From: Octopus bimaculoides
Lineage: Eukaryota
Direction: 5' to 3'
DNA length: 64,000 nucleotides
NCBI RefSeq assembly: GCF_001194135.2
Contig: NC_069000.1
Coordinates: 8,490,688 to 8,554,687, forward strand
Below are positions 4,629-36,334 of the stretch, piece by piece. The position numbers were made by a program, and so were the translations under genes. Below the pieces are notes generated by a model, which had not been told where the DNA came from, searched no databases, and worked only from the letters and a program-made list of their open reading frames with translations. Within the stretch, counting starts at the first letter, position 1. Each line of letters starts with the position of its first letter.

Positions 4629-6117
4629 ATATATATGTATGTATATATATAAGATAAATTTATACAAACCATACATATCTTTTTAACAATGTTGTTAATA
4701 TTGATTTTAATGTAGTAGTAGTAGTAGTAGTAAAAAAAAAAAAAAAGAGTAGTTTTCCACAGATAAACAAACATTATGCATACACAAGATAGTGTATTAA
4801 GTATAAATACTTCTACACGCACACACACAAAATTACATATATATATATACATATATAAACAAAATTAAGGGATCAGCAACAGGTTGCTTTGTTTATAAAT
4901 GTATAAGAACTTTTAAATAAGTTCCACACCGATAATGGTGCTTACATACCGAAGGGCTTGGTAAAAATTATTAATTATTAATTTATTAATAAATTAATAA
5001 ATTGATAATCCTTTACCCTTTTTAATTGTAATAATATATATACATATATGTATACACACACTCATACATAATACACACATATACGTACAAACAAATGTAC
5101 AGGCACATCTATAAACATGCATGGAAATTACAATTGGCTTACACAAAAATACATACATGCCTACACATATGTACATACACGGAAACAGGCATACATAAAT
5201 ACATGTTAAAAAAACTCCAAAACAAAACAAGTATGTGAAATTTCCATTCTCTGCAAACGCAAACGCAACAAAATATACATACATACATGTATATATATGT
5301 CTGTATAATTACATATGGTTAATGTACAAAAACTTTGATTTGATATATATATATGTATATACACATTCATTATATATATAAAATGTATGCATTTATGTGT
5401 GTATTTATGAGGTGGGTATACAACCCATTGTTATCACACCAACACACACACACACACACGTATATTCATACAAACATACAACTCAGAAAATTATGTATAA
5501 TTCACACACACACACCACTTATATATAACCATATAATTTTTCTGTAGAACTTGAAAATATTTCTCTGAGATATGAAGAACAGAAGCTCTTACCAAGATTG
5601 CTGAAAATAAGTTTCGTATTTTCCTTCTGTTTTTTTTTTGTTTCATTTTTTTTTTTTTTTTTTACCATTTACTGGATTACTTCCCCCTATTTATGATATA
5701 ATTTTTTTTTTTTTCAATAAAACATTCTGAGGGGGTCGGGGGTTCTTGTTTCGTTTCTTTTTCTTTTTTTTTTTTTCTTTGTAGGATTTTTATTATATTT
5801 GTAAAGATTTTTCTTGTCTGTGTATGTATGTATAAATATGTACACAAAGATATATATATCTATATATATATATAAACACACACACACACACACACAAACA
5901 TGAATATGTGCATGTACATATACATATGTGTGTGTGTGCATGTACATAAATATACATATACTTTTTATGCATACAAATATATTTATATATACTGCATATT
6001 CACATATACAGAATATACTGTATAATTCTCTATTTCTCTCCCACAAATGTGTAATGTCTGTATGCAATAATCAGAAACATATGTTATATACATACACTAT
6101 ATATATAATACACACAC

Positions 6118-6168
<51 letters not shown>

Positions 6169-6396
6169 AGATAGATAGATAGATATGTTTCTATGCATGT
6201 GTATGCACATGTGGATGCGGAGTGGGGGGGAAAAATCTTTTTGTTTTTTCGGTGAGGTACACAACAACAATCCTCTTTCAATAAACCATTTCCCGACTCC
6301 CCACAATAAAAAGTAAACAAAAAAAAAAGAAAAAAAGAAAAAAAAACAAGCCCCCTTCCCCCACCCCCGCCTCACTGTTGATCTCCAATATGGATA

Positions 6397-6665
6397 TTAT
6401 GTGACAGAGGGGGCATTGTCTGAAGGGAGTCCGTTGGCTTGTTTGACGTGCATCATTGCCCGCTGCTTTTGTTTCTTGGCAGCAGCAGCAGTCTGCTGTT
6501 GCTGCTGAAACTGCTGCTGTTGCCTTTCAAAGTCTCGTTGGTCACGCCGCATCTGCCAGTTCTTCAGTCGATTGAGGGGCAGCGAAATCACGCCAGACAG
6601 AGTGAGCATGATGCCGCTCATGTAAAAAGTGGCATTCACATCTCCTGTGACCTCTTCGAGGTAAC
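6397..6665 (-). CDS. MCT-family transporter terminal exon B, distal duplicate (GYLEEVTGDVNATFYMSGIMLTLSGVISLPLNRLKNWQMRRDQRDFERQQQQFQQQQQTAAAAKK...APSVT*)
   Basis: Strong polypyrimidine acceptor (cttttcttcctccaacag|GT TAC, phase 1). 29 residues identical to exon A; TAA stop at 6399-6397. Confidence 0.87.
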
Positions 6666-6767
6666 CTGTTGGAGGAAGAAAAGAAAAAAAAAAAGGAAGA
6701 AAATGAAGAAGATGAAGGAAGAAGTGAAATACTAAGTCACCAGTCAGACAGAACACGGGTGGGGGTA

Positions 6768-6811
<44 letters not shown>

Positions 6812-7666
6812 TGAGGATATTTTTCTGATATGCAATTCAGTATGTTGTGCAGCTGCTGCTACATATTCTGTCTTTCCCTAGTTTCTATCCCCTGGACTGT
6901 GGTTATGTTGCCTTTAAAGGTTTTAGTTACTTCATTTCAACCACCAGCACCTACCTATTTCAACCTGGCATTTATTTTATTGATCTATATTGATCAAAAC
7001 ACAGGTATAATTGAGTGGTTAAGAAGTTCAGTGCCAAACTATTAAGTGATTTTGAGTTTAGTCTCACCATCTGGCACCTTGGACAAATGTCCTCAACTAA
7101 TAACCCTGAGCCAACCAAAGCCTTGTGAGTGGATTTGATAAATGGAAACTGCAAAGAATCCCATATTCTATCTATCTTATTGAAAATTTTTTTCAGAGAT
7201 ATCATGAACACTACTGATGGTGCTATATGTGTGATATTGTGAGATTATTGATGGTGTTATCTCTGAGATATTGGGAACATCAATGATGGTGATGTATGAC
7301 TACTATTCAGACATAATCGAAAATGTTTTGCCTGAGAATATTGTGTAGCACCATTGATGATGATGCATGTGCGATATTGTGATGTTATCGAAAGAGTGCT
7401 CTATGATGCTTCAGGACATCAGCCACAGCATTGTATATGGGGACAGCATGTCGTTTTCATACCTGTTTTTATAGGTTTAAGTCTGAGACTGGTGTTATAA
7501 GTACAACATTACAATATAGAAAAATTGAAAAACAAAAATCATATACAAAAGAGTAATTAATACTAAGATATTGCTAAAATCTTTGTAAAACATCATATCA
7601 GTATGGCATGTTGAAATAACACGATGCCACAATGACAACATTGTGACAAACTAGATTATTAAAACA

Positions 7667-7936
7667 CAGTGGAATCTCAGTTTACGAATTTAATTCAATC
7701 CTGAAGGCTGTCCGTCACCTGAAACATTCGTAAATTGAAACTATTTTTCCCATAGGAAATTCAAGAAAAAGTATGGTGAATTCAAGCAGGGATGTGCACT
7801 GAGGTAAAGTTTGACACCAGCTGATGGTCACCTGCTGATACTCCAAACTTGTAGCCAACCATTCTTGCTAGCTTGTGTGTTTGTTAGTCAAGACACTCTG
7901 TCACCCAAAATTTTTTCGTAAACCAAGATTCCACTG
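7667..7936. mobile_element. Tigger/pogo-like MITE
   Basis: TIRs cagtggaatctcagtttacgaa / ttcgtaaaccaagattccactg, followed by TA. Confidence 0.75.
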
Positions 7937-7990
7937 TATTACAAAACCACACATTAAAAATAAGGCAATATAAAAGATCCAATGTCACAG

Positions 7991-8195
7991 GGAAGCATTT
8001 CTGAATGTGGCTATGTTCAAGTGAAGCATTATAAAACCGCTATGTCATAGTGAAGCCTTATGACATTGATGCATCATATAGAAGTGTTATGATGCAGCTA
8101 TGTCATAGATAAGCATTATGATGTAACTATGTAGCAATAAAGCATTATGACATCACTATGTTATAGTGAAGAATTATCACAATAACGTTATGATA
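7991..8195. repeat. Degenerate 29-bp tandem repeat
   Basis: aagcatt-like anchors at 8024, 8053, 8082, 8111, 8140 and 8169. Confidence 0.8.
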
Positions 8196-8697
8196 TTGGT
8201 ATGGCTCAGTGCTTCACTACTGCATAGTGATGTCACAAATGATGATTCAGATGCTGCTTTTCCATTGGGCTAGCTTCAGACTACTGCACTCATGATGCGG
8301 CAGAGGGTTAATATGCTGCTACGAAGTCACAGGGCAAAGAAAAAAGACATCAAAATCAGTTTCACCTCAGGGTTATAACATGAACATTTCATAGTGCAAG
8401 GTTATGATACGAAAGAAAAAAAAAAATAACATAGTGCAGGGGGGTTATGGGTAACGCTGGAACTGGACAACATTAAAGTTAATACTGAAAAGCAAACAAA
8501 ACTAGGAAACAAGAGAAATACAAAGAACAAATGACGAAATCTGAAAGGTAAATAAAGAGATTTCAGTTCCGATCTGTGCTTCACAGCTAAATTACTGGTA
8601 AGGCAAGACACGAGGGTTGTTTTGAGATTAAATAGTATGACAAAAGCATGGTAAACTATGCAAACAGGAAACACTAACAACTTATACATATCATTTA

Positions 8698-8745
<48 letters not shown>

Positions 8746-9399
8746 CATATATATACATACATTTATGTATATATATATATATTTAAATATATATATATAC
8801 CTGTTTAGTGTTGACTGTCAGAAAAAAGAGAGTACTCAATACCATAGCAGAGATTAATTATATTACTTTATTTTAGCTGAGTTAGCCCCTTGTGACTGAG
8901 TTTTGCCTATGGGTGCACACAGGGCTATCAGGTTAGTTATGATATAACTCACCTAAAGACCCTCTGTACCCACAGGTGAAACTCAATATAGCAAGAGACT
9001 GATTTGGCCAAAATAAAGTATAAATACATGTGTATGTGTATATATATACACACACACACACACATATATGTATGTAGATATACATATGAGGGTATGTGAC
9101 TTATTGATTAGGGTGTTGGGCTCACAATCATAAAGTCATGGGTTCAACTCCTGACTTGAGCAGCGCACAATGTGTTTGAGCAAGGCACTTAGGTGACCAC
9201 ACACTATGTCATTTGGCTTTATAAGGATATCCCAATAATCAAATTGACATACACACTTACTAGTATGATAAATGCATATTTAAAAGAAAATGGGTGGTAA
9301 AACAAGGGATTAAGAGATGTGATGAAATAGTATGTAAAGAATAGATGTCTTGTTAATCCTTTTGATACCAGGTTCTATGGTACGAAACTAATGTATTAA

Positions 9400-9616
9400 C
9401 CCTTTAGCGCTCAGATTACTCTGTCAAAGGTAATATTTATTCACTTTGTTTTGAATTGATCATGTATTTATCTCATAGCTTTGCAATTTTGATGATGCAA
9501 TAGTATGTTTTTAGAATGGTATTGTAGGGTAGGTGTGACAGGCCAGCTCTGGCTGTTTTGAATATAAAACAGACAGAACATTTTGGCTGGGTATGTTCAG
9601 TTTAAATGTTAAAGGG
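9400..9616. mobile_element. piggyBac-like MITE (TTAA-CCCTTT...AAAGGG-TTAA)
   Basis: TTAA at 9396-9399 and 9617-9620. Relatives at 21245-21461, ~29370-29567, ~31880-32025 and ~33540-33749. Confidence 0.78.
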
Positions 9617-10107
9617 TTAAAGTGGTATTAATTAAAAAATGTTTCATTAAAATATGTTAATTTATGTTGCAAAGCCAGCTTAATAACTACTAAGTTAATT
9701 TTACTAAATTACTTTCAAAATTAATTCAAACAAAAGCAGCATATTTCAACAGAAATATGCTAACAAAAGGGTTAACTTTTTTGGACCCAGAAATAGGTTT
9801 TAGCAGGCATGATTTTATTTGACTATACCCCTGGAAAACACAAAAGTAGACGGTCACATAGTTTTGGGTTTATGATTAAAGATAATGGTGTTTCTACCAA
9901 TTCATGAGCCAGAAGCACAAATCCATGTGGTTGCCTACTTTTTTGTCTTCCAGAGGTATAGTCAAATGAAGTCATCATTGTTTAACGTCCACTTTTCCAT
10001 GCTTGCATGGGTCAGATGGAATTCATTGAGGCAGGTTTTCTACAGCTGGATGCCCTTCCTGTCACTAACCCTCACTTGTTTCCAGGCAAGGTAATACTTC
10101 CTAAGGC

Positions 10108-10231
10108 TTCAACCATTGCCTTGCAACAATCTTAACACATAGTCCAACATTTCCCGTGTTGTGGATAATTCCTGCCTATCCTTGTCCAATTTGTGCCCAC
10201 CATGTCAACCACAACTCTATCCTCTCCTCCT
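10108..10231 (+). repeat. Repeat copy that is the inverted partner of 16982-17115
   Basis: 10108-10188 equals the reverse complement of 17035-17115 at 80 of 81 positions. Confidence 0.9.
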
Positions 10232-11189
10232 ACACCTGCCCCACCTATAACTACTTCCCTTTCCCTCTTGCCTACCACCCTTCCCTCCTTTACACACCTG
10301 TAGCCTACATAACCTATTCATCTACAGGCTCTTCCACACCCCCATCCTTTACCCCTCAACCAGGATCCCTTCTTTGCTCTGGACCCAACTGCCATACCTG
10401 TCCCCTTTCCAACACCACCCACCTCATTCAACCCTAACCACCCCTCTTTATATGTAACTGACCCTTCCACTGCACCTCTACTGAATCACATTCACCTTGT
10501 AAAATACACCCTCAGCAATCCCCATATATATCAGACAGACTGCATGATGCGTGTCTGATTGCTTCACCAAACCCTTGTTGGACATCAGCTATCTTAGCAA
10601 GGAGTCCCCTGTGACATGCCATTTCCAATCAGCACATCACCCCACTTAGCATAACTCCATCCCCCAATGTGCAAGAGAATCCCAAATATCATTGTCATGT
10701 AATTTTTTTTTTTTAACCACAGAGACTCACTTCCATCTATTATACCATGTGTGTATGTGTAATATTTCTCGTGTACAAAAGGACATGTAAGTTGGTACTT
10801 CACAGAAATGGGACAGACGCTGGACATTCAGTATGGAAGATCTGTGGCTGAAAGTAAAATGGCTTGAGTATTTCTGTAGGGATAAAGAAAAGAAAAGAGA
10901 GAGAGAGAGAGAGAGAGATGCTAACTGGACATTAATGGAACCACACACACAATCATGCTCACTTCAAATACATACATACATGCATATGTATGTGTATGTA
11001 TGTATATGAGTGTGTGTGTGTATAAACACACATATTCATATGTAAATATGTATGTGTACACACATACACACACACACAGTAGACAGTATATACAAAGGGA
11101 CCACAACCAGGCTGCTAATAGCATAAGCAGAATTCACATGTAGCATCTGCATAAGTCTAGTAAGCATTAGGAGCACATGTAGCTCCTTA

Positions 11190-11825
11190 GAATTAATAGA
11201 TGGCTTGTGTCACCCGAGTGACATAATTAGCAGTGGAAGTAGGTGGACCGAAAGCATAGTAACTCTAGTAAGAATGGGATGAAGAGAGAAGAAAATTCAA
11301 AGGGCTTTTACATCTACTGATACCAAAGGGTTTCTTTGACAGAGCGAAGGGAAGGGTTTATGATGCTTATGTACGAGGTGCAATGCCGCACAGAGTGAAT
11401 CGGGGCCTTTGAATACCGAAGGTTTGTGAAGATGGGGAAGAAACGCGACAGACTTGCACTACAGGAAGTGTACGATCAGTATGCATGGACAATGGTGTAG
11501 GAAGGGGCTGAGACAAAAACTAGATACTAGAGGAATGAGAAGTAATGTGCAAGAGGTAAAAAAAAAAACTATATTGATATGGGCTTATGATATGTAAGAA
11601 TGACAACAGTATTATATATGCATATACATATATAGATATATATATATATATATATTTATAAAAGTGCTGAGTGCTCAAAGTAGATGGAGACTAGGGAAGA
11701 GTGAAACCAAGGAGGCCATGAGACAAAGTGATGAAGACTGATCTTGAGATGCTGAGACTCACAAAAGAGATGAGGGACTGTGACAATTAACAATATGCAG
11801 TTCTGGGGATAGAGAAGACTCCCTC
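11190..11825 (+). mobile_element. RTE-clade LINE 3' ORF fragments interrupted by a microsatellite
   Basis: Remnants ESIVTLVRMG..., TKGF..RAKGRVYDAYVRGAM and VDG..GRVKPRRP.DKVMKTDLEML resemble the RTE post-RT region and C-terminus. Confidence 0.65.
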
Positions 11826-12428
11826 TTTCCTGAACAAGGATGGTGATGGGAACATGAAAACAGAGGTAAGTGATGAAGGCTGAGTTGCTCTCGACGACAA
11901 CCACCCTGCCTCTACTCACCCTCTTGCTAATCTGTCATTCACCCTTTTCTCAACTGCCCCTCTGCCTCCTTGACACCCTCTCTCCTCTCTTTTACTATCA
12001 TTTGCCCCTTACGTGCACTGCACCCATGTCACCTGTATATGACATAGGATAGCACTGGATCTCTTTCTGCTCAATCCAGCCACCATCCACAAAACTTTCA
12101 TCCTTATTGCAATAATTTGGGAAAGGGAGGGGGGGGGNNNNNNNNNNNNNNNNNNNNNNNNNNNNNNNNNNNNNNNNNNNNNNNNNNNNNNNNNNNNNNN
12201 NNNNNNNNNNNNNNNNNNNNNNNNNNNNNTATCAACGGCATTCAAACATTGACGAAAGGGTTGACAGAATGGTTTCGTCACTGTCTACATCTCAGGCTCT
12301 CTGCTGACAGTATTTCTGTGCCTGTAGAGTTATCTTGAACCAACAATGCTTCACAGTAGCACAACCAGAGCAGGAAGTTCTGAAAGTTAAGAATCCTTGG
12401 GTATGGAAATCCCTCCAGAGTAGACGAG

Positions 12429-12473
<45 letters not shown>

Positions 12474-12677
12474 ATATGCAAATACACCCACTCACCTTTC
12501 TCTTTCACATTCTAGGAATCTTAAAACTTAGTAATCTTAGAATCACCACCACCACCACCACCAATACTATTACTATTAAGCCCCCATCCATTACCAAAAC
12601 TGCTAAGGCTGAAGAATGAAAGAATACCTGGTATTCATAAAACAAAAGAAAAAAAAAAAAGAAACAAGGAGTACTCT

Positions 12678-12913
12678 CTAATTCTGTACAAACTCCTCGG
12701 TCTTAAACAATTCGCTGACACCGCTGTCTGACGGGCTCGCAGTTTTGGCGTCTTGGTCATTGATTGGCTCCTCTTCGGGGCTGACTTGGTCGCGTTGCTC
12801 TTGCCACTTCTTGAGTCGGTTGAGCGGGAGTGAGATCACTCCTGACAGTGTCAGCATAATGCCGCTCATATAAAAAGTGGCGTTCACATCTCCTGTAATA
12901 TCTTCAAGGTAAC
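12678..12913 (-). CDS. MCT-family transporter terminal exon A, proximal (GYLEDITGDVNATFYMSGIMLTLSGVISLPLNRLKKWQEQRDQVSPEEEP...EEFVQN*)
   Basis: Acceptor ttcccttgcag|GT TAC (phase 1). Encodes the TM12 hydrophobic helix; TAG stop at 12680-12678. Confidence 0.9.
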
Positions 12914-14602
12914 CTGCAAGGGAACAAATTTAGACGATAACTAATCCAGATTATCCGACACTTAAAGTAGCGCCACAGCATTCCAACGCCCGGGTACCAA
13001 AAGAAAAAAAATAATAATAATAAAAAAATAAAATAAAAAACAAAAAAGTTAAAAAATGGGGTTTTGGATGATAACAGGTTTCTGACATAAACACAAGGTC
13101 CTTAATTCTGAGTAGGTCAAAAAAGGGCTTGACAGTTGGTGATATTGACCCTGTCAGTACTTGAGTGGGACTGGTACTTTATTTTATTAACCTTGGGAAG
13201 GTAGCATTCTAAGCTGATATCAGCAGGGTTTGAACTCAGGAAGTATTAAAGAACATATCTAAATTGTGCAAGTTTCTACCAATTCTACCCCTACACTACT
13301 CTTAAAAAAAGACTGTACAACAACCCATTTTATAATGATAAAAATAATTAAGTCTGTAATAATTTTTGATAAGTGTAAGTCCAATAATTTGGTAGGAGTT
13401 GGGGTTTAGTTAATTAAACCAACTCCAGCTTTCACTGGTCCTTTATTTTATTGACCTGGAAGGGTGAAAGCTAAAGCTGATGACTGTGGCAAGATTTGAA
13501 ATCTTGAAAGGCAAAATCCAGAGAGTAAAAGAAAAAGGTCATGGAAAATAATAACAGACATGAAATGAGGAGATCCCACTAAAAGGATGGTCACCTACAC
13601 TCAACCAAGGAACCGTACAGAACCAAGGTTACTCTGGCCATCAAGGCTAAGTCCAGTTGTGTTCTCCGAGCTGTAGGTACATGCAAAGAGTAGGTCGATT
13701 CTTTTGGGCCTACTCCATTCTCTTACTACCCTCACCTGCCTTTCAGCAAATTTATTGGATTACAGTCGCTCCCTCTCCTCATCTTCCTCTCCAAGTGGAG
13801 TTTGGTCATATTGACTGTCACAGGCAAAAGAATAAAATGCCTGTGTTCAAACAGTTCTTTCAATCTTGCCCACGTGTAGACACTATTGAGGGTTTCACCA
13901 GAAGAATATTTCCTGGTGTTTTTAGGGGTGCTGCTTCTTCTGTGGGTCATCTTATCATATATTATGTACCTCAAAAACCCACCACTATTTTTCATACAAC
14001 AATTAAGTTGAAACGGTAAAGCCTTTGTGCGCTTGGCTGTTGGTGTTAACATCACAATCATTGTTTTAATGCCCACTTTTCCATGCTTGCATAGATCAGA
14101 CAGAGTTAACCGAGGCAGATTTTCTGTGGCTGGATGCCTTTCCTGTTGTCAACCCTCATTTGTTTCCAAGCAAGGTAATATGGTAATATTTCCCTATGGC
14201 AGGAGGATACGTTTTTGCAGCATATTGGAAATGAATGAAACTCATTTACAACAATCATGCTGCACCAGAACAAAGACACATAAACATACATCCTTTAGAG
14301 GCAGAGATAATTTTAATCAATCAAGAATTTTTGTTGTATGGTATATGATATACCTGTATTAAGTGTGTTGTTCAAGTGCATGTTGCTAGCCACTCAGTTA
14401 TTTCCCTTGCTCATTTTTGCTTGAGTTGGGAAAATTACCAAAGTCATGGATTCTGTTTTTTTCTAAAGGTTAAGTTCCCTTGGCTGCTATAGATAAGGTT
14501 GGACAATTATGCTGATAGCAGCTGTTGGGCCACAGACACTTGTCCACAACTCTCCTCTTGTCTTTAACAAAACAAAAAGAAAAAAACATTGAAGCATAAG
14601 AA

Positions 14603-15050
14603 GCATTCTCAAGGTTCTTAGGTCCCTCCCCCCCACTGAGGTAATATCAAGGTCCCTCCCCACTGAGATATAAGACCCACCCTCAGAGTGGCATTTATTT
14701 ATAAGGACCCTCCCCACAGTGGCGTTCTCAAGGTCCCACCCCACAGTAGTATTCTCAAGGTCCCACCCCAGTGTAGTATTATTAAGGTCCCTCCTCAAAG
14801 TGGCATTCTCAAGGTCCCTCCCCACAGAGACATTCTCAAGGTCCCTCCCCACAGAGAGGACCCTCCCACAGTGGCATTTCTCAAAGTCCCTCCTCAAAGT
14901 CCTTCCTCACAGCAGAATTCTGAATGTCNNNNNNNNNNNNNNNNNNNNNNNNNNNNNNNNNNNNNNNNNNNNNNNNNNNNNNNNNTTCTCAAGGTCCCAC
15001 CCCAGTGTAGTATTATTAAGGTCCCTCCTCAAGGTTCCACCCCACAATGG
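14603..15050. repeat. ~30-bp minisatellite (ccccacagtggcattctcaaggtccctc-like), spanning gap 14929-14985
   Basis: ctcaaggtccc recurs about every 30 bp; the ORF track shows repeating KVPP decapeptides. Confidence 0.9.
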
Positions 15051-16290: not shown

Positions 16291-16981
16291 TGCTGGGTCA
16301 AGGGTGAGATGGCTGAGAGGGTATCTGTGTCTGCTCATGATAAGACAGGCACCTAAGATAGATAGTGAAAGAAGAGTACAAGTTACCAGGTCATACTCGC
16401 TTACATGCAACGGGTATATATGTATTTTCTTTTTTTTTTTTGGAGTGGTGGGTGATATGCTTTTAGCAGCAGTCTTGGTTTTGGTTTGTGTGTTCTCTTA
16501 GAAGGGCATGGTTGGCTTGGTCTTCTTTCACTTTGATTTTTCAGCCTTTCATTACTAAAAATAAGATGCTTCATGACAGTGAAAGTTAAAACCAATCAAA
16601 ATATACTTGTAGAAGTGTAAATATTGAAAACAAAGTTTCTTTCTTTAAAATGCAATTAACAGTTTAAAATTATGCCTTAATTACAATGTCAGTAATGGAA
16701 ATAGAAAACCTCTCTAAAACTCTGATGCTTTTGAAGGATGAAGGGCAGTTCACCTCGGTGGGATTTGAACTCAGAATGTAAAGATCTGGAACAACCACCT
16801 CAAGGTATTTTGTTCAACATTTTAATAGTACTGCCAATTATTAATGATAATGACTTTTCAATTATAGGCACAAGGCCTGAAATTTTTGGAGGAAGGGGTT
16901 AGCTGATTACATCAACCCCAGTGCTCAAATGGAACTTATTTCATTGATTCCAATAGGATGAAAAGCAAAGCTGACCTAGGC

Positions 16982-17115: not shown

Positions 17116-18884
17116 CAACAAACGATGATGACAACAACAACGATGATGATGATGATGATGATGACAACAGCAACAATCAATGATGATTGTGATGACAATG
17201 ATGTTGGCGAACGCTTATAAGCATGCATGCATGAGGGAGCGAGGGATTAAGTAGGGTTGCTATAGCAACCATTATTGTTTAGCCCCAGGTCAACCTTGTT
17301 CAAGTATGATCAAAGATATTTCAATCTTGACCATCTTGTCAATTACCCTTTTTTTTTCTTCTTTTTTTTTTAATTTTCCAGATTCATGCAATATTTTTTT
17401 TTAAAGACAGTAAGATTATAATTAGAAAGGGATTTGGCATCTATTTCTAGCAGGCTTGGGTATCCATGTAGAGGCTCCCTCGTTGGTTCCATGAAGCAAG
17501 ATCATAGGAGATGGGTACATTCTATTACATAAGGGGTTATGTGGTATGTGTGAAGGAAAATGGTAATTAGCAATGGAAGAGTAAATGAGAAACAGAACAA
17601 TGTCAGGAGTACAGCTCCATCAGAGGCATCAATGCAAATAAAACCCAAGAACTAGTGAACCAATAAGAGAGCCTCTGGCAATCTTGACCATCTCCTATCC
17701 ATCTATATATCCACATGTCTTTATTTTATATATATATATATATATATNNNNNNNNNNNNNNNNNNNNNNNNNNNNNNNNNNNNNNNNNNNNNNNNNNNNN
17801 NNNNNNNNNNNNNNNNNNNNNNNNNNNNNNNNNNNNNNNNNNNNNNNNNNNNNNNNNNNNNNNNNNNNNNNNNNNNNNNNNNNNNNNNNNNNNNNNNNNN
17901 NNNNNNNNNNNNNNNNNNNNNNNNNNNNNNNNNNNNNNNNNNNNNNNNNNNNNNNNNNNNNNNNNNNNNNNNNNNNNNNNNNNNNNNNNNNNNNNNNNNN
18001 NNNNNNNNNNNNNNNNNNNNNNNNNNNNNNNNNNNNNNNNNNNNNNNNNNNNNNNNNNNNNNNNNNNNNNNNNNNNNNNNNNNNNNNNNNNNNNNNNNNN
18101 NNNNNNNNNNNNNNNNNNNNNNNNNNNNNNNNNNNNNNNNNNNNNNNNNNNNNNNNNNNNNNNNNNNNNNNNNNNNNNNNNNNNNNNNNNNNNNNNNNNN
18201 NNNNNNNNNNNNNNNNNNNNNNNNNNNNNNNNNNNNNNNNNNNNNNNNNNNNNNNNNNNNNNNNNNNNNNNNNNNNNNNNNNNNNNNNNNNNNNNNNNNN
18301 NNNNNNNNNNNNNNNNNNNNNNNNNNNNNNNNNNNNNNNNNNAAAAATTTAAAAAGGAAATTGTTTGAACCTCACACCCACTTGCTCAATAATGGTACAG
18401 TCCTGAATTGCTAACCAAACCATCCAACTATGCAAAGACAGAAGTAACCTCCACCTTGTCGTTAGTTAAGCACTCAACTAGATAGTAGTAGGTTTTCTGC
18501 CTACTGCTAACTAGGAATACAATAACATAATGTTTCTATATTGTGAGAGGCAAGATTCTCTGTGAGTAGTACAACGTTTCTACTACTTAAACCCTCAGTT
18601 ACACTCATAGTTCCCCCCCCCCATCACTTGACAACTGATGTTGGTGTGCTTATGTCCCCGTAGCTTAACAGTTCAACAAAAGTGACTGATAGAATAAGTA
18701 CTAGGCTTACAAAGAATAAGTCCTGGAGCCAATTAGTTCGATTAAAGGCGGTGCTCCAGCATGGCCACAGTCAAATGACTTAAACAAGTAAAAGAATAAA
18801 ATAAAAAAGTAAAAGAATAAAAGAATAATAAACAAAAAAAATGAAATGAGGTGAAGGGACAATGGCCCTCCATCACCTACTTAC

Positions 18885-19154
18885 CCACTCCAAGACCATA
18901 GATGCCACTGTAGATATTGAGCGTGGTCTTGTCTTTGAGAAACGGGCAGAAGATGGTGCACAATCCTACCATTATGAGGGCTGTGTTGTTGATGTGTAGT
19001 GCACCGAAGACTGGACGGTCAGCCAGAAAACCTGAGAGTAGCCGTCCAACAATGTTCGTAACACCGCTGACCGACACGAGGTATGATGATTCCTGGCTGT
19101 TCATGCCAATTTGCTGTGCCAATGCGGGCAAATAGACAACCGGGATGAAAAAAC
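18885..19154 (-). CDS. MCT-family transporter coding exon 4 (GFFIPVVYLPALAQQIG...GVTNIVGRLLSGFLAD...IYSGIYGLGV-G; TM7-TM10)
   Basis: 270 nt, phase 1 to phase 1. Acceptor ctcttcctag, donor G|GTAAGT. TM8 Arg motif NIVGRLLSG is present. Confidence 0.93.
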
Positions 19155-19607: not shown

Positions 19608-20463
19608 CTAACATGCTAAGAAATGTAGAGAGAAGCAAGACACAGAATGTCAAATTTCGGAATAGTGACAGATCAATTATTTCCTGGAACATCTGTAGAA
19701 GTTTTCTTGAGTGTCCATTGTTTTCATAAATGCTTTCCAAACTTCGAATACTGGCCTGGAATTTAGCAATGCTAACAATACTGGAGCCCATAAGGCAAGG
19801 TGGTAAATCACTGTTGCAATTGTAAAGATAACACTTAGGGGGATCTTCATGGTTTGTTGTGTTAATAGTCTGTCGGCTTTCACACCTGCTTTCGCATGGG
19901 CTTGCCGATGTGCTGTTCACAGCCGATGCCTCAGCCGAGGGCGTGTTTATCTCAATACGTGAGTCACTGACGCCGACATAACTGAGACTACGAGTGCTCA
20001 ATGAGCCCTCCTCAGAGAGTTTGTCCCAAGGGTCCTCATGCGTGAGGGAATCACAACTTTTCGCTTTGGGCATACAGGACATACTGTTCGTGATCAGCTT
20101 GTTGCTTTCAGGAATGTCCATCGAGTGGATAGCGGGGGGAGCAGGGGGTTTCAGCAAGTTTGAGCTCATGGGTTTCGTAGTCGTGCCATCCATCCTAAAG
20201 GACTCGACAACTAAGCTTTGTGGTAGCAGGCTGCTCCTGCTGGGGCACTTTGAACTGTGTGGGCTCCTCGACCGCTGAAAGTAGGATGCAATACTGCTGC
20301 GGTTGGAGCCGATACAATCCAATTTGATGAGACGGTTGTCGTTGGTGATGATACAGTTGTCGAGAGATCCGTTAGATATGGTACGCTGTCGCTTTTTCTC
20401 CTCGATAAGGGCTCGCATGATCGAACCCCGTGCGACGAAGCCCCGCTTCATCCGCTTCGTATG
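19608..20463 (-). CDS. MCT-family transporter large exon 3, visible part only (Ser-rich central loop to TM7; HTKRMKRGFVARGSIMRALIEEKKRQRTISNGSLD...DLSLFRNLTFCVLLLSTFLSML-G)
   Basis: 285 stop-free codons ending in the MCT pre-TM7 motif IIDLSLFRN and donor G|GTACGT. The 5' part (expected TM4-TM6) runs into N-gap 20464-20740. Confidence 0.88.
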
Positions 20464-21244
20464 NNNNNNNNNNNNNNNNNNNNNNNNNNNNNNNNNNNNN
20501 NNNNNNNNNNNNNNNNNNNNNNNNNNNNNNNNNNNNNNNNNNNNNNNNNNNNNNNNNNNNNNNNNNNNNNNNNNNNNNNNNNNNNNNNNNNNNNNNNNNN
20601 NNNNNNNNNNNNNNNNNNNNNNNNNNNNNNNNNNNNNNNNNNNNNNNNNNNNNNNNNNNNNNNNNNNNNNNNNNNNNNNNNNNNNNNNNNNNNNNNNNNN
20701 NNNNNNNNNNNNNNNNNNNNNNNNNNNNNNNNNNNNNNNNAAAATTTTAATTAAAAACCGTATTTCTTTTTCATAAAAAAAAAAATACATATAAAATAAT
20801 CTGGTGCAGGCATGGCTGTGTGGTTAAGAAGATTGTTTCCAAACAATGTGGGCTCAGGTTCAGTCCCACTGAGTGACACCTTGGGCAAGTGTCTTCTACT
20901 ATAGCCCCCAGCCAACCAAAGTCATCAATTTGGCAAAGAGACTGATAAAACCCTGTTTTTATGTGTGTCTGTGTGTACCCTTATTCTAACATCGTGTAAT
21001 GATTGTAAATGAGCATCACTGTCATACAAGCGACGTTGCTCATTTGCAGTCTTCCATGCAAAACACATCTGGACATAGAGAAAAATATTACCTTACTTGG
21101 AAAAATGTGAGGGTTGGTGACAGGAAGGGCATCAAGCTGTAGAAAACCTGCCTCAACAAGTTCTGTCAGACCCAGGCAAGCATGGAAAAGTGTACATCAA
21201 ACAATGATAACGAAATATTAATTAACTGTTAAAATTTTCATTAA

Positions 21245-21920: not shown

Positions 21921-22064
21921 CTCCCAGAATTCCATAGGTCACTATCAACATCTGGATGCTGGATGAAAAACTACTAATAAAAAATGCAGCTGCTGCAAAG
22001 ATGCTGCCAGCAATGGTAACCTTACGACATCCATATTTCGTGGCCAGTGTACTTGCAAAAGGAC
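21921..22064 (-). CDS. MCT-family transporter coding exon 2 (GPFASTLATKYGCRKVTIAGSIFAAAAFFISSFSSSIQMLIVTYGILG-G)
   Basis: 144 nt, phase 1 to phase 1. Acceptor ttttccag, donor G|GTAAGT. Typical MCT loop 2-3 motif (KYGCRKV) followed by TM3. Confidence 0.93.
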
Positions 22065-22988: not shown

Positions 22989-23262
22989 CAATCATGAGGT
23001 AACTGCCTGTCAACAGAGAGCCAATCAGGGCCGAAGCTGTTGCCGTGACACCAAAGTGATCCTCAAAGACTTGCTTTATTGACCCATACGAAAGACATAT
23101 CCCATCCACAATCACATTGCAAAGGAACGAAGCGAAGGTCACGACCCAACCCCAGCCGCCGTCCGGTGGTTCAATGATTTGGGGCCTTGGCTGTTCGTGA
23201 CCAGACACCCTAATAGGTGTGGCAGGATCTTTTCCCTTGTCCTTTGGTTTCATCATAGTCAT
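22989..23262 (-). CDS. SLC16/MCT-family transporter, first coding exon (MTMMKPKDKG...PPDGGWGWVVTFASFLCNVIVDGICLSYG...GSYLMI-G; TM1-TM2)
   Basis: Contains the MCT N-terminal signature PPDGGWGW. Acceptor ttgttacag before 23364 and donor G|GTAAGT after 22989 (phase 1). An in-frame TGA lies upstream within the exon, so the first ATG (23262) is the likely start; 23263-23364 would be 5' UTR. Confidence 0.93.
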
Positions 23263-23691: not shown

Positions 23692-25193
23692 TATAATATG
23701 TATGTGTATATTCTTAGAAATTAGGAAAATCTCGAACACAGGAAAATAGTTATGAAAACAGTTTTGGAAAATTAGGCAAAAATACATCCATAGATGATAA
23801 AGTGTGGCCAGTAGCCACTACGGAGTGTGATTATCTGTAGCGGCTGTTGGCCACTTTTTTCTGTCTTTCGGAGTATTTTTTCAGCTATTCTCCTGTGATT
23901 GAAAATTTCTTGATTTCTAAGAAAATGTCAGCTCATCTGATGTGTCAATGTTTGTTTGTATATATAACAGACAATGAATAGCACAATAAAATGTTACATA
24001 AGTTTGATATTGAATGAACGAAGGAAAAGAAATATAAAAAAAAGAACAGAAAAAGACACAAATTAATCCACTTGCATCTACAGATTTTGGGGACAAGATG
24101 GTAGTGAGAGGAAAAAAAAAGTGGTGACCAACATAGAAGAGTTCACAAAGAGTAGTAATGATCATGTTTATGTGTCAGCTGTTGAATACATTGATGGTGT
24201 GCATGAGAATGTATTTTTGGCATATATGTAGACAGCTGTGTATGTGTATTTATGTGTGTCTGGTATTGAATATGTTTGGTGTTTGTGTGGGTGAATGCTG
24301 ATTTCATGTGTATAGCTACTGTTTCTCTCCCATGTATGTGTGTGCATGAATTTATGTATTTGACTGTGAATGTGTGTGCATGCTGAATTGTGGTAGTGTG
24401 TATGTGTGGTGTAGGAGTGATAGGAAATGAAAGGTGTATCTGTGTGAGTAATTATGTCAATAGCTGGTTTACATGCACGTGATTATTGAACTGTGGTGAC
24501 CTGGTGTGACTGTTTGTCTTCTAAGTGTAGTGTGAGCATTTAAAGAAGAAAAAAAAGAAACTGTTAGGAAAAGCTGAGTAGGTTCCAAGAAGGAGGATAA
24601 GCTACTGTTCTCTTTGTAGGTGAGAGATGAGGGATACAAATCCCTCATCTCTCACCTATAAAAGCAAGACAAGAAATAAAGAGATCCTGATGGTATGATT
24701 TGCTGAGGGGAAATAACATGCAAAATATGATCCATTGCTGAGCTGAATGCCCCTCTTGAATCCATTTGCTAATCTTTTTCCAAACTGAGCATGACTTTAT
24801 GATAGCAGCGAGAGTGGGCAAGTATGCGCATGTAAATGTAAATGTGAATATATGTACTGCATGTGCACGATTTAAAGCATCAAAGCAGGGAGGCAGAATT
24901 AGTACAAGTGCACTACAGACAGTGATGGCAAGAGAGAGAGAGAGAGAGAGATAGAAGATAATGGATATGAGAAAGTAAAAGGGGGAGGGATGAAGAGAAG
25001 AGATAGTGAGAGAGAGAGGGAGTAGTGAGAAGAAGAAAAGAGAGAAATGAAGGAATGACAATGGAATGGAGAACAAAAGAAAGGAGGGGAAACAGGAGAG
25101 AGAGGAAAAAAGAGAGGGAGAGATAGAGAGAGGAGAGTTTATCAGAGAAAGAACTGTGTAGTGAATGCATGAGTGTGTGTGTATATATATCTT

Positions 25194-35250: not shown

Positions 35251-36334
35251 TCCCACTTCCCCTCCTTTCTCTCTCTCTCTCTCTTTCTGTCAGTCACTGT
35301 CTCTCTTTCTCATTTACTCACTCCCACCTCTCCCACTGTCATTCATTTAACACATGCAATGGAGAAATGTAGAAATGTGTTTGTGTGCGCGAGCATCGCA
35401 TAAAATAGGTTTGATCTCTTTTCGTTAGAGATTACACATAGACACATACCCACATACATACACTGATATATACTTACATACATACATGAACATGCACATG
35501 TCCATATATACATTCCCATATCTATACACTCATACATACACACGTTCACACATACAAATTCCCAAACTCTCTTTCTCTCTCACACACACACACGCACAGA
35601 AGGTTCTCCGTCGGTTTCGACGAGCAACAATCGTTCAACCATCTAAATGTCCTACCTCATGAGATTAACGTTTCAGTGGCACATGAAACGTACCTCAAAA
35701 CATAATTCTTAGGCCGTACCAACATCACAGTGTGACAAAGCCGAGGGCATTTGAATCCCAGGTAGGAAAGGGTGATGGGAAGCAAATAAAAAGGGCATAG
35801 GTGCATGAACGAAATTTGGTAAGGGAACTCAAACCCAGGACCTTTTTTTTTTATTACAAAACAATGTCGATTTTTTTTCAATTTTGATATCCAAACAAAT
35901 AGTTATATTTGTTCCGGATCGTCTGCAGCCTATTCTCCTCTCCCCTCCATCTTCCACTGCTTAATTTCCACGTTTTTCTTTCTGTTTCTTTGTATTTAAA
36001 TATTTTCATTTAAAATATACAAGAGTTACAAAATAAAATCAAATAAATTGTACATCAATCAAATCAGCCAAATCTAATAATGGAAAAGTGATGTTTTAAA
36101 TCAGTCCAATAATGCTTCTATGCTCGTTCGTTTTTGGCGATGAAGTTTTTCAAAGCGTTTTCATTGGCCACCCTCATCCCCCAAAATTAGAGTGTGCGCT
36201 CACACTCTCACCCTTCCTGCACTACCTGTTCCCGAACCTGTGAAGAGGGGAGGGGAGTAAAAACTCAATAAAGGATTCAATAAAGGGAGCTCAATGAGTG
36301 AGAGTTACAAGAATATATATATCATCAACATCAT

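What the first reader, a model, noticed from the sequence alone, without database searches (positions are those of the whole stretch)
6397..12913. Tandemly duplicated terminal exon gives an MCT transporter two alternative cytoplasmic tails
Seen in sequence: two minus-strand exons (12913-12678 and 6665-6397), 6.2 kb apart, each with its own phase-1 acceptor, begin G-Y-L-E. They share 29 consecutive identical residues (TGDVNATFYMSGIMLTLSGVISLPLNRLK, TM12) while differing at 13 synonymous positions and no non-synonymous positions in that stretch. They then diverge into an acidic, Ser/Pro-rich tail (A) and a polyQ/polyA, basic tail (B). No upstream MCT exons lie between them, and the only intervening gap is 92 N. 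Inference: an old exon duplication retained under purifying selection, giving mutually exclusive last exons that swap the C-terminal tail and the 3' UTR. Established knowledge: MCT C-termini mediate trafficking and partner binding. I am not aware of this arrangement being described for SLC16 genes but could not search.
Basis: partly seen in the sequence, partly recalled or inferred. Interest (0 to 1): 0.8.

Follow-up and report, generated by a model that had tools for sequence, protein, structure and literature searches.

The report
Octopus MCT gene, two alternative tails
An octopus SLC16 (monocarboxylate-transporter family) gene carries two tandem copies of its last coding exon, which give the protein either an acidic or a basic, glutamine-rich cytoplasmic tail; the arrangement is real and conserved across octopods, but it is a well-known kind of alternative splicing and is already annotated as two isoforms in sister species.

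Summary
Exons A (12913-12678) and B (6665-6397) on the minus strand both follow an AG acceptor in phase 1. They share 29 identical residues, with 13 synonymous and 0 non-synonymous differences (dS about 1.1-1.3, dN/dS about 0.05).

The window is Octopus bimaculoides. Only the last exon is duplicated. The 92-N gap lies in non-coding DNA between A and B, and both sides are collinear with O. vulgaris and O. sinensis. There the gap corresponds to about 1.9-2.0 kb, and no SLC16 exon lies between A and B.

Both species annotate one gene with two products, identical for 636 residues:
- tail A: XP_029647735.1 / CAI9737888.1
- tail B: XP_029647734.1 / CAI9737887.1

Alternative forms in the O. vulgaris annotation come from PASA transcript assemblies. 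Argonauta hians keeps an intact, unannotated exon B 2 kb after A. Thirteen decapod sequences show only A-type tails.

One correction: the exon that really precedes A and B (E5, TM10-11) is hidden in gap 17748-18342.

Tandem-duplicated terminal exons that swap C-termini are common (77 of 236 such human events). This is a new member of a known kind, of modest interest. The function of the swap (sorting, partners, 3' UTR) is inferred.

The parts
22989..23262 (-). Exon 1 of the SLC16 gene: start codon, N-terminus and TM1, including the signature DGGWGW
   Evidence: ATG at 23262 and donor G|gtaagt. 100% identical to O. bimaculoides XP_014782001.1. Orthologous exon mapped in L001-L004.
21921..22064 (-). 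Exon 2 (PFASTLATKYG...ILGG, TM2-4)
   Evidence: ag|GT...G|gtaagt boundaries, phase 1 at both ends. tblastn 100% to the O. vulgaris protein.
19608..20463 (-). Exon 3, 3' part only: long TM6-7 cytoplasmic loop and start of TM7. Its 5' part (TM5-6) is lost in assembly gap 20464-20740.
   Evidence: Open frame running from the gap edge, donor G|gtacgt. The orthologue's exon covers residues 135-517. Collinearity places the missing part in the gap.
18885..19154 (-). Exon 4 (GFFIPVVYLP...GLGV, TM7-9), with a phase-1 donor
   Evidence: ag|GT...G|gtaagt; tblastn.
17748..18342 (.). Assembly gap (595 N) that hides exon 5 (TM10-11, AAFVSL...GLPLG), the true splice donor for exons A and B
   Evidence: Exon 5 is present in O. 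vulgaris, O. sinensis, Argonauta and Sepia between exon 4 and exon A. The flanking window sequence is collinear with L001 on both sides of this gap. RefSeq XP_014782001.1 for this assembly lacks it.
12678..12913 (-). Terminal exon A: TM12 plus the acidic tail (KWQEQRDQVSPEEEPINDQDAKTASPSDSGVSELFKTEEFVQN*)
   Evidence: The tail is identical to XP_014782001.1 and orthologous to O. sinensis X2 and O. vulgaris CAI9737888.1. A-type tails are also found in Argonauta and all decapods examined. dN/dS about 0.11 against O. vulgaris.
12138..12229 (.). Assembly gap (92 N) in the non-coding stretch between A and B; it probably hides part of isoform A's 3' UTR and poly(A) signal
   Evidence: Both flanks are collinear with L001 and L002. 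The gap corresponds to L001 25472-27343 and L002 24715-26753, about 1.9-2.0 kb. No SLC16 exon lies there. No AATAAA or ATTAAA occurs in the visible 450 nt after A's stop.
6397..6665 (-). Terminal exon B: TM12 plus the basic, Gln/Ala-rich tail (NWQMRRDQRDFERQQQQFQQQQQTAAAAKKQKQRAMMHVKQANGLPSDNAPSVT*)
   Evidence: 96.6% identical to the C-terminus of O. sinensis X1 XP_029647734.1 / O. vulgaris CAI9737887.1. dN 0.015 and dS 0.11 against O. vulgaris. Intact orthologue in Argonauta. Strong polypyrimidine tract, 37 of 40.
5100..6396 (-). Conserved sequence downstream of exon B; candidate 3' UTR of isoform B (extent uncertain)
   Evidence: About 1.2-1.3 kb after B's stop aligns to O. vulgaris. Identity is mostly 75-98% up to +1000 nt, with dips to 64%, and 60-73% beyond. 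AATAAA lies at +603 in the window. The poly(A) site was not determined.

Best explanation
The window holds one Octopus bimaculoides SLC16 (monocarboxylate-transporter family) gene on the minus strand. Its last coding exon (half of the TM11-12 loop, TM12 and the cytoplasmic tail) was tandemly duplicated long ago, at least before the Octopus-Argonauta split.

The phase-1 donor of exon 5, which is hidden in an assembly gap, can be joined to either copy:
- the proximal acceptor of exon A, after which the transcript ends downstream of A;
- the distal acceptor of exon B, when A is skipped, after which the transcript ends downstream of B.

Each copy carries its own stop codon and its own 3' UTR, so the two are mutually exclusive alternative last exons. 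The two proteins have the same 12-TM core and a nearly identical TM12. They differ in the cytoplasmic tail:
- A is acidic and contains an EEE cluster.
- B is basic with a poly-Gln/Ala run.

This charge contrast is kept in Argonauta.

Shown: the gene anatomy, the duplication, purifying selection on both copies, conservation in four octopod assemblies, and annotation of both isoforms in two sister species.

Inferred: the swap changes membrane sorting or partner binding of the transporter, and the two 3' UTRs give each isoform its own post-transcriptional regulation, probably in different tissues.
For: Anatomy
- AG acceptors, phase-1 junctions and intact ORFs for A and B.
- The exon 5 donor is phase 1 in the orthologues.

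Single gene
- No second copy of exons 1-4 anywhere in the 64 kb.
- No SLC16 exon between A and B in gap-free O. vulgaris or in O. sinensis.
- The window is collinear with both across every gap.

Selection
- 13 synonymous and 0 non-synonymous differences in 29 codons; dS 1.1-1.3 and dN 0.065 over 42 codons.
- Orthologous comparison with O. vulgaris: B has dN 0.015 and dS 0.11; A has dN 0.019 and dS 0.17. For the tail-only part of B, dN is 0.028 and dS 0.11.
- Exon identity is 95-96%, against about 60-87% in most flanks.
- In the TM12 region, Octopus B against Argonauta B has dN 0.037 with saturated dS.

Isoforms
- P0122 (XP_029647734.1 / CAI9737887.1, 725 aa) ends in tail B.
- P0002 (XP_029647735.1 / XP_036366873.1 / CAI9737888.1, 714 aa) ends in tail A.
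- Everything upstream is identical.
- Only the longer product is indexed for the gene.
- O. vulgaris alternative forms come from PASA on Iso-Seq and RNA-seq (PMC10700109).

Depth
- Argonauta has A at L003 18082 and B at 20401. B there has an acceptor and a 148-codon ORF, and keeps EEV...KNWQLRRDQQDFEKQQQQQQQQ.

Tails
- The charge contrast is conserved.
- A strong polypyrimidine tract precedes distal B and a weaker one precedes proximal A in Octopus.

Precedent for tail function
- Acidic EEE clusters in the MCT1 and MCT4 tails bind carbonic anhydrase II (PMC5986270).
Against: - I saw no reads. Expression of isoform B rests on annotation in other species (Gnomon and PASA models), not on junction counts, and nothing is known for O. 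bimaculoides itself.
- RefSeq for this assembly lists only a tail-A model.
- Exon B is not annotated in Argonauta.
- No canonical poly(A) signal is visible after exon A in the window, and the nearest ones in O. vulgaris and O. sinensis are not obviously conserved. The 3' end of isoform A is therefore undefined.
- The polypyrimidine asymmetry is reversed in Argonauta.
- The functional reading is by analogy with mammalian MCT1/4. In the HMMER alignment this protein lacks the MCT1 K38 and D302 equivalents, so a proton-antenna partner may be irrelevant here.
- The low-complexity parts of both tails evolve fast between Octopus and Argonauta.
Confidence: 0.85

Rival explanations
1. Exon B is the last exon of a separate, tandemly duplicated SLC16 paralogue. 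Its upstream exons are missing from this fragmented assembly, hidden in the 92-N gap or mis-scaffolded.
For: A, B and exon 4 lie on different contigs joined by N runs. The 92-N gap is underestimated relative to sister species, where it corresponds to about 1.9-2.0 kb. The last intron of the gene is about 6 kb, similar to the distance from B to the gap.
Against: In the O. vulgaris locus, which has no N, and in O. sinensis, no SLC16-like exon lies between A and B or in the 10 kb after B at tblastn E <= 1e-3. In Argonauta, A and B are only 2 kb apart, too little for five upstream exons. The window is collinear with both chromosomes across the gap. Annotators treat A and B as products of one gene.
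Confidence: 0.02
2. Exon B is a dead or dying duplicate, a pseudo-exon that is rarely or never spliced in. The X1 isoforms would then be annotation artefacts.
For: No read-level evidence was available here. The O. bimaculoides and Argonauta annotations list only tail A. All decapod transcripts examined carry only A-type tails. Searches for further B-type proteins found none.
Against: The reading frame, the AG acceptor and the pyrimidine tract are intact in four species. There are 13 synonymous and 0 non-synonymous changes against A. dN/dS is about 0.13 against O. vulgaris over roughly 34 My, and the protein is conserved against Argonauta with saturated dS. Exon identity is 96% against lower identity in the flanks. 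The O. vulgaris alternative forms derive from transcript assemblies.
Confidence: 0.06
3. The duplication is an assembly artefact: haplotype or repeat-induced false duplication of the terminal exon.
For: This is a short-read, heavily gapped assembly. The window has 13 N runs.
Against: The copies differ at 27 of 131 aligned nucleotides and have unrelated tails. The same A-then-B arrangement occurs in three other independently assembled genomes, two of them long-read or chromosome-level.
Confidence: 0.01
4. Both exons are used, but the meaningful difference is regulatory rather than in the protein. The switch would mainly exchange 3' UTRs (stability, localisation, miRNA control), and the tail sequences would be largely unconstrained low-complexity spacers.
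For: About 1.2 kb downstream of B is conserved with O. vulgaris, with 95-98% identity at +300 to +500 nt. The distal parts of both tails are replaced by different low-complexity runs in Argonauta.
Against: The juxtamembrane 15-20 residues specific to each tail, the charge sign of each tail, and the terminal motifs (A: SPSDSGVS.LFK.EE; B: KQK..VK..NGL) are conserved between Octopus and Argonauta. Tail-only dN/dS for B is about 0.25. This rival does not exclude a role for the protein tail; the two are compatible.
Confidence: 0.25

Closest known systems
[quoted passage not shown] 2022, PMC9741552), for example the 3' exons of tropomyosin genes
   Same: A homologous pair of adjacent exons arose by tandem duplication and is used one at a time, giving isoforms that are identical except for a homologous region. 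In human, 77 of 236 such events exchange the C-terminal region. These regions are enriched in TM helices and disordered tails, as here with TM12 plus a disordered tail. Such events are typically ancient and under purifying selection, as here.
   Different: No SLC16 gene appears in the text or held supplement of that catalogue. This event is seen so far only in octopods. Because the exons are terminal, the choice involves cleavage and polyadenylation as well as splicing, rather than the steric or RNA-structure mechanisms of internal mutually exclusive exons (PMC5740500).
Mammalian MCT1/MCT4 (SLC16A1/A3) C-terminal tails as partner-binding modules
   Same: A cytoplasmic tail follows TM12. Tail A carries an EEE cluster (SPEEEPIND), like the E489EE cluster of MCT1 and the E431EE cluster of MCT4 that bind carbonic anhydrase II (PMC5986270). 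Swapping the tail would be expected to change such interactions.
   Different: In mammals each tail belongs to a separate gene, not to alternative exons of one gene. In the HMMER alignment to MCT2 the octopus protein has Asp at the MCT1 Lys38 position and Asn at the Asp302 position (residue roles from PMC2740427). It may therefore not be a proton-lactate symporter at all. No partner is known.
O. sinensis LOC115221672 isoforms X1/X2 (XP_029647734.1 / XP_029647735.1) and O. vulgaris CAI9737887.1 / CAI9737888.1
   Same: These are the orthologous gene, with the same two terminal exons in the same order. The tails are 96-97% identical to those in the window.
   Different: They are database models only, and I found no paper discussing them. 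A-B spacing is 11.4 kb there against about 6 kb plus a gap here. The O. bimaculoides annotation itself has only a truncated tail-A model.

Membership tests
SLC16 / monocarboxylate transporter family (MFS) | Major facilitator superfamily fold with 12 TM helices | tested here: met
   Pfam MFS_1 PF07690, E = 1.3e-47 for the full-length orthologue P0122 and 6e-16 for the gapped O. bimaculoides model. Two matched halves flank a long TM6-7 loop.
SLC16 / monocarboxylate transporter family (MFS) | Closest solved structures are SLC16 members | tested here: met
   Top PDB sequence hits are MCT2 (8e-57), MCT1 (1e-53 to 5e-51), MCT8 and MCT10. The bacterial SfMCT scores 2e-21 and other MFS proteins are far weaker.
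SLC16 / monocarboxylate transporter family (MFS) | Signature [D/E]G[G/S][W/F][G/A]W leading into TM1 (family signature recalled from established reviews, not re-derived here) | tested here: met
   PPDGGWGWVV is encoded in window exon 1 and aligns to PPDGGWGWIV of MCT2.
SLC16 / monocarboxylate transporter family (MFS) | Signature YFxK[R/K][R/L]xLAx[G/A]xAxAG in TM5 (recalled from established reviews) | tested here: inconclusive
   The motif region is lost in window gap 20464-20740. The O. vulgaris orthologue has GYWFEKKRAFATGVAVCG, which aligns to GKYFYRKRPMANGLAMAG of MCT2. It is therefore met in the orthologue but unreadable in the window.
Proton-coupled lactate/pyruvate MCTs (MCT1-4 type) | Lys38 (TM1) and the Asp302/Arg306 pair (TM8), needed for proton-lactate translocation in MCT1 (PMC2740427) | tested here: not met
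   The HMMER alignment to MCT2 puts Asp at the Lys38 position (a 4-residue gap nearby makes this less certain). It puts Asn at the Asp302 position, and Arg306 is kept (vtNivgR against fvDmfaR). The protein should be filed as SLC16 family with unknown substrate, not as an MCT1-4-type lactate carrier.
Tandem-duplicated alternative last exons (C-terminal substitution events) | Two adjacent exons homologous to each other | tested here: met
   43 aa at 88% identity, E about 1e-22. The tails retain a shared PSD...S(VT) end motif with the decapod tail.
Tandem-duplicated alternative last exons (C-terminal substitution events) | Both exons belong to one gene, with a single set of upstream exons and compatible splice phase | tested here: met
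   One annotated gene with two products.
Tandem-duplicated alternative last exons (C-terminal substitution events) | Each exon is used in mature mRNA, one at a time, and each has its own poly(A) site | not testable with these tools
   Only indirect evidence: Gnomon X1/X2 models and PASA-derived O. vulgaris isoforms. No reads or 3'-end data were available. The poly(A) signal after A is not visible in the window.

The most novel reading that the evidence does not exclude
The duplicated terminal exon is an octopod-lineage innovation, absent from squids and cuttlefish. It gave one SLC16 transporter a second tail that is basic and poly-Gln, with its own long conserved 3' UTR. That second form would be used in a tissue- or compartment-specific way, for example neural against epithelial, or a different membrane domain. 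The same transport core would then be re-addressed without gene duplication. The acidic tail A would recruit a carbonic-anhydrase-like or other basic partner that tail B cannot bind.
Probability: 0.3. Interest if true: 0.45.

Novelty: new member of a known kind. Interest (0 to 1): 0.3.

Why it matters
The case shows that raw sequence alone can correctly flag a functional alternative terminal exon, and that the O. bimaculoides gene model is wrong. The model lacks TM5-6, exon 5 and the whole B isoform because of assembly gaps.

Biologically, it offers a clean natural experiment on what an SLC16 C-terminal tail does. The two isoforms share the same core and a nearly identical TM12 but have oppositely charged tails, and the contrast is conserved at least from Octopus to Argonauta.

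It does not open a new class of mechanism. Tandem-duplicated C-terminal exon swaps are frequent in animals, and this one is already in RefSeq and ENA annotation.

Tried and rejected
1. The search for homologous proteins with exon A alone found only the window's own 63-aa ORF. The search with exon 5 + exon B gave 71 candidates and none scored. Both were dead ends. The full-length query was the one that worked.

2. Exact look-ups of the ORFs a prokaryotic gene caller would make from exons A and B found nothing, so no extra assemblies or transcript contigs of this species were found.

3. The representative search with exon B found only terminal-exon fragments of other animals' SLC16 genes and the A-type cephalopod exons. 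No further B-type tail turned up.

4. I tried to bound the Sepia locus by synteny with the gene downstream of exon B. tblastx gave only microsatellite and low-complexity matches. The annotated 160-aa neighbour in O. vulgaris looks like a low-complexity ORF. Absence of exon B in decapods is therefore shown only for the 10 kb after exon A in Sepia pharaonis and for the 12 decapod full-length proteins examined (11 Logan contig ORFs plus the S. pharaonis model). It is not proven.

5. Separate paralogue, pseudo-exon and assembly artefact were considered and rejected; see the rivals.

6. I looked for conserved canonical poly(A) signals. None lies within the visible 450 nt after A. Several lie after B, but their positions are not strictly conserved, so no 3' ends are claimed.

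7. A scan of ORFs of 110 aa or more elsewhere in the window found no other convincing gene.

Full report
**What is in the sequence**

On the minus strand, exon A (12913-12678) and exon B (6665-6397) each follow a polypyrimidine tract and an AG. Each begins GT|TAC CTN GAA, which completes a Gly codon in phase 1 and reads (G)YLE. Each runs to its own stop codon, TAG for A and TAA for B.

The two translations are 88% identical over 43 residues, with tblastn E about 1e-22 inside the window. The block TGDVNATFYMSGIMLTLSGVISLPLNRLK is identical in both, with exactly 13 synonymous and no non-synonymous differences. Over the 42 alignable codons dN is 0.065 and dS is 1.2-1.3, so dN/dS is about 0.05.

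After the shared part, tail A is acidic (net -7, pI 4.1, with SPEEEPIND). Tail B is basic (net +5, pI 10.95) with 14 Gln and an Ala run.

**The gene around it**

The window is Octopus bimaculoides. UniRef A0A0L8GEM4 and RefSeq XP_014782001.1 match at 100%. The upstream exons of one SLC16 gene lie on the same strand:
- E1: 23262-22989
- E2: 22064-21921
- E3: 20463-19608, with its 5' part lost in gap 20464-20740
- E4: 19154-18885

All junctions are phase 1 with ag/gt boundaries. tblastn of E1-E4 against the whole 64 kb finds no second copy of any of them (best off-target E > 0.06). Only the terminal exon is duplicated.

The orthologous proteins show one more exon between E4 and the terminal exon. 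This is E5, AAFVSLRSVLLVDLLGLGQLTKSFGLLTLFQGIATMAGLPLG, covering TM10-11. It is not visible in the window. Collinearity with O. vulgaris places it in the 595-N gap at 17748-18342. In the orthologues E5 has phase 1 at both ends, so both A and B join it in frame.

**The assembly gap**

The 92-N gap (12138-12229) lies about 450 nt after exon A's stop, in non-coding DNA, so frame continuity is not at issue. The window is collinear, in the same order and orientation, with O. vulgaris OX597833.1 (L001, no N in the locus) and O. sinensis CM016876.1 (L002) on both sides of this gap and of all other gaps in the gene. In those species the gap corresponds to about 1.9 and 2.0 kb. The 92-N estimate may therefore be too small, and the A-B distance of 6.2 kb in the window is a lower bound.

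**Test of the separate-paralogue rival**

In O. vulgaris the exons map as follows:
- E1: 10001-10276
- E2: 11687-11833
- E3: 13288-14448
- E4: 16701-16973
- E5: 17870-17989
- A: 23840-24075
- B: 35519-35787

No other SLC16-like exon lies between A and B or in the following 10 kb. O. sinensis gives the same picture. In Argonauta hians (L003), A starts at 18082 and B at 20401, only 2 kb apart. That leaves no room for a second set of upstream exons. The artefact rival fails too, because four independent assemblies agree.

**Are both exons used?**

Cluster look-up and the sequences show two products:
- O. sinensis LOC115221672 isoform X1 (XP_029647734.1), identical to O. vulgaris CAI9737887.1 (725 aa), ends in tail B.
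- Isoform X2 (XP_029647735.1 / XP_036366873.1), identical to CAI9737888.1 (714 aa), ends in tail A.

The first 636 residues are identical. The gene index, which stores only the longest product of a gene, returns the locus for the tail-B protein and nothing for the tail-A protein. This is what one gene with two products predicts.

The O. vulgaris genome paper states that UTRs and alternative splice forms were added by two rounds of PASA updates, using Iso-Seq and RNA-seq assemblies (PMC10700109). This is indirect transcript evidence. I saw no reads, and the O. bimaculoides and Argonauta annotations list only tail A.

**Selection and age**

The comparison is between O. bimaculoides and O. vulgaris, which diverged about 34 My ago according to PMC10700109.
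- Exon B has dN 0.015 and dS 0.11.
- Exon A has dN 0.019 and dS 0.17.
- The tail-only part of B has dN 0.028 and dS 0.11.

Coding identity is 95-96%, against about 60-87% in most of the flanking intron.

Argonauta's exon B keeps an acceptor, a 148-codon open frame and the B-specific residues (EEV, KNWQLRRDQQDFEKQQQQQQQQ, then HKQKAA..VKEPNGL). dN is 0.037 and dS is saturated relative to Octopus. The charge contrast is kept as well: Argonauta A has net -17 and B has net +2 with pI 9.1. A decaying pseudo-exon is not compatible with this.

All 12 full-length decapod proteins examined have A-type tails. These are 11 ORFs from transcript-sized Logan contigs and the Sepia pharaonis model. A separate squid or cuttlefish genomic ORF is also A-type (P0135). 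No B-like exon lies within 10 kb after exon A in S. pharaonis.

Octopus tail B ends LPSDNAPSVT* and the decapod tail ends SPSDSGVSVT*. The whole exon, tail included, was therefore duplicated from an ancestor ending in ...PSD...SVT. Whether the duplication predates the octopod-decapod split cannot be decided with the data available.

**How it most likely works**

The E5 donor is spliced either to the proximal acceptor of A or to the distal acceptor of B. Each terminal exon brings its own stop codon and 3' UTR, so the choice is an alternative-last-exon decision that couples splicing to cleavage and polyadenylation.

In Octopus the proximal acceptor has a modest pyrimidine tract (23 of 40) and the distal one a very strong tract (37-38 of 40). 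This fits regulated use of A with B as the default. The asymmetry is reversed in Argonauta, so I give it little weight.

About 1.2-1.3 kb after B's stop aligns with O. vulgaris, with 95-98% identity at +300 to +500 nt. This is compatible with a functional 3' UTR. No canonical poly(A) signal is visible in the 450 nt between A's stop and the gap.

The protein consequence is a swap of the cytoplasmic tail on an unchanged core. By analogy, the acidic tail A and the basic tail B should differ in partners or sorting. The analogy is to mammalian MCT1 and MCT4, whose tail EEE clusters bind carbonic anhydrase II (PMC5986270). That step is inference.

**Family placement**

The protein is an MFS transporter (Pfam MFS_1, 1e-47). 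Its closest solved relatives are MCT2, MCT1, MCT8 and MCT10. The DGGWGW signature is in window exon 1. The TM5 signature is readable only in the orthologue.

In the HMMER alignment it has Asp at the MCT1 Lys38 position and Asn at the Asp302 position, with Arg306 kept (residue roles from PMC2740427). I file it as SLC16 with unknown substrate, not as an MCT1-4-type lactate carrier.

**Comparison with what is known, and novelty**

Tandem exon duplication followed by one-at-a-time use is a classic route to isoform diversity. In the human catalogue, 77 of 236 such events swap C-terminal regions. These regions are enriched in TM helices and disordered tails (PMC9741552). Terminal cases are treated as alternative polyadenylation events rather than true mutually exclusive splicing (PMC5740500).

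No SLC16 gene is mentioned in that paper or its held supplement. My literature searches found no description of an SLC16 tail swap by duplicated terminal exons. The two octopus isoforms are, however, already in RefSeq and ENA.

I therefore rate this as a new member of a known kind, with interest about 0.3. It is a correct and tidy finding, useful for fixing the O. bimaculoides gene model and as a natural tail-swap experiment. It is not surprising to a specialist.

Noticed in passing
window 17748-18342 and 20464-20740 (gaps); RefSeq XP_014782001.1: The public O. bimaculoides model for this gene (596 aa) is wrong because of assembly gaps. It lacks TM5-6 and the whole of exon 5 (TM10-11). It bridges the missing exon with an invented 'GSLA' junction (GLGVGSLAGYLED), and it has no tail-B isoform.
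   Followed up: yes
P0122 residues about 50-55 and 520-530; window exon 1 (NVIVDGICL) and exon 4 (VTNIVGRLL, about 19070-19040): In the HMMER alignment to human MCT2 the octopus protein has Asp where MCT1 has the essential Lys38, and Asn where MCT1 has Asp302. Arg306 is kept. The protein may therefore not be a proton-coupled lactate carrier, and its substrate is unknown.
   Followed up: partly
L003 18082-18440 and 20401-20850 (Argonauta hians): In Argonauta both tails have grown by low-complexity insertions that exaggerate their character. Tail A gained a 30-residue Asp/Glu/Gly run (EEEDDDDEDDDEDYDDGDGDGGEGGD). Tail B gained a Thr/Asn/Ala-rich run of about 50 residues. Exon B is unannotated there.
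   Followed up: partly
window 12453-12428 vs L001 24333-25280; window 12138-12229 vs L001 25472-27343: The A-B interval is 11.4 kb in O. vulgaris and 11 kb in O. sinensis, but about 6 kb in the window. About 0.95 kb just after exon A's conserved 3' flank is present only in O. vulgaris and O. sinensis. Another roughly 1.9 kb corresponds to the 92-N gap, so gap lengths in this assembly can be strongly underestimated.
   Followed up: partly
window 22786-22584 and 18801-18614 (and many copies in L001/L002): Short interspersed repeats of about 170-200 bp in the introns match several other places in the O. vulgaris and O. sinensis loci at 80-88% identity. One contains a 10-N gap flanked by a duplicated 60-bp stretch (22630-22500), which looks like a local assembly stutter.
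   Followed up: no
window 14490-14906, minus strand: A tandem array in the last intron translates as repeated 'VGRDLEN(A/T)T(L/V)' units. It aligns to itself at several offsets in O. vulgaris and O. sinensis. It looks like a minisatellite rather than a coding exon.
   Followed up: no
P0137-P0150: ORF fragments from many other animals' genomes start at the same point (G.L.D.TG...) as the octopus terminal exon. The phase-1 intron before the TM12 exon therefore seems to be widely conserved in invertebrate SLC16 genes. One fragment (P0146) also has a poly-Gln run right after TM12.
   Followed up: no
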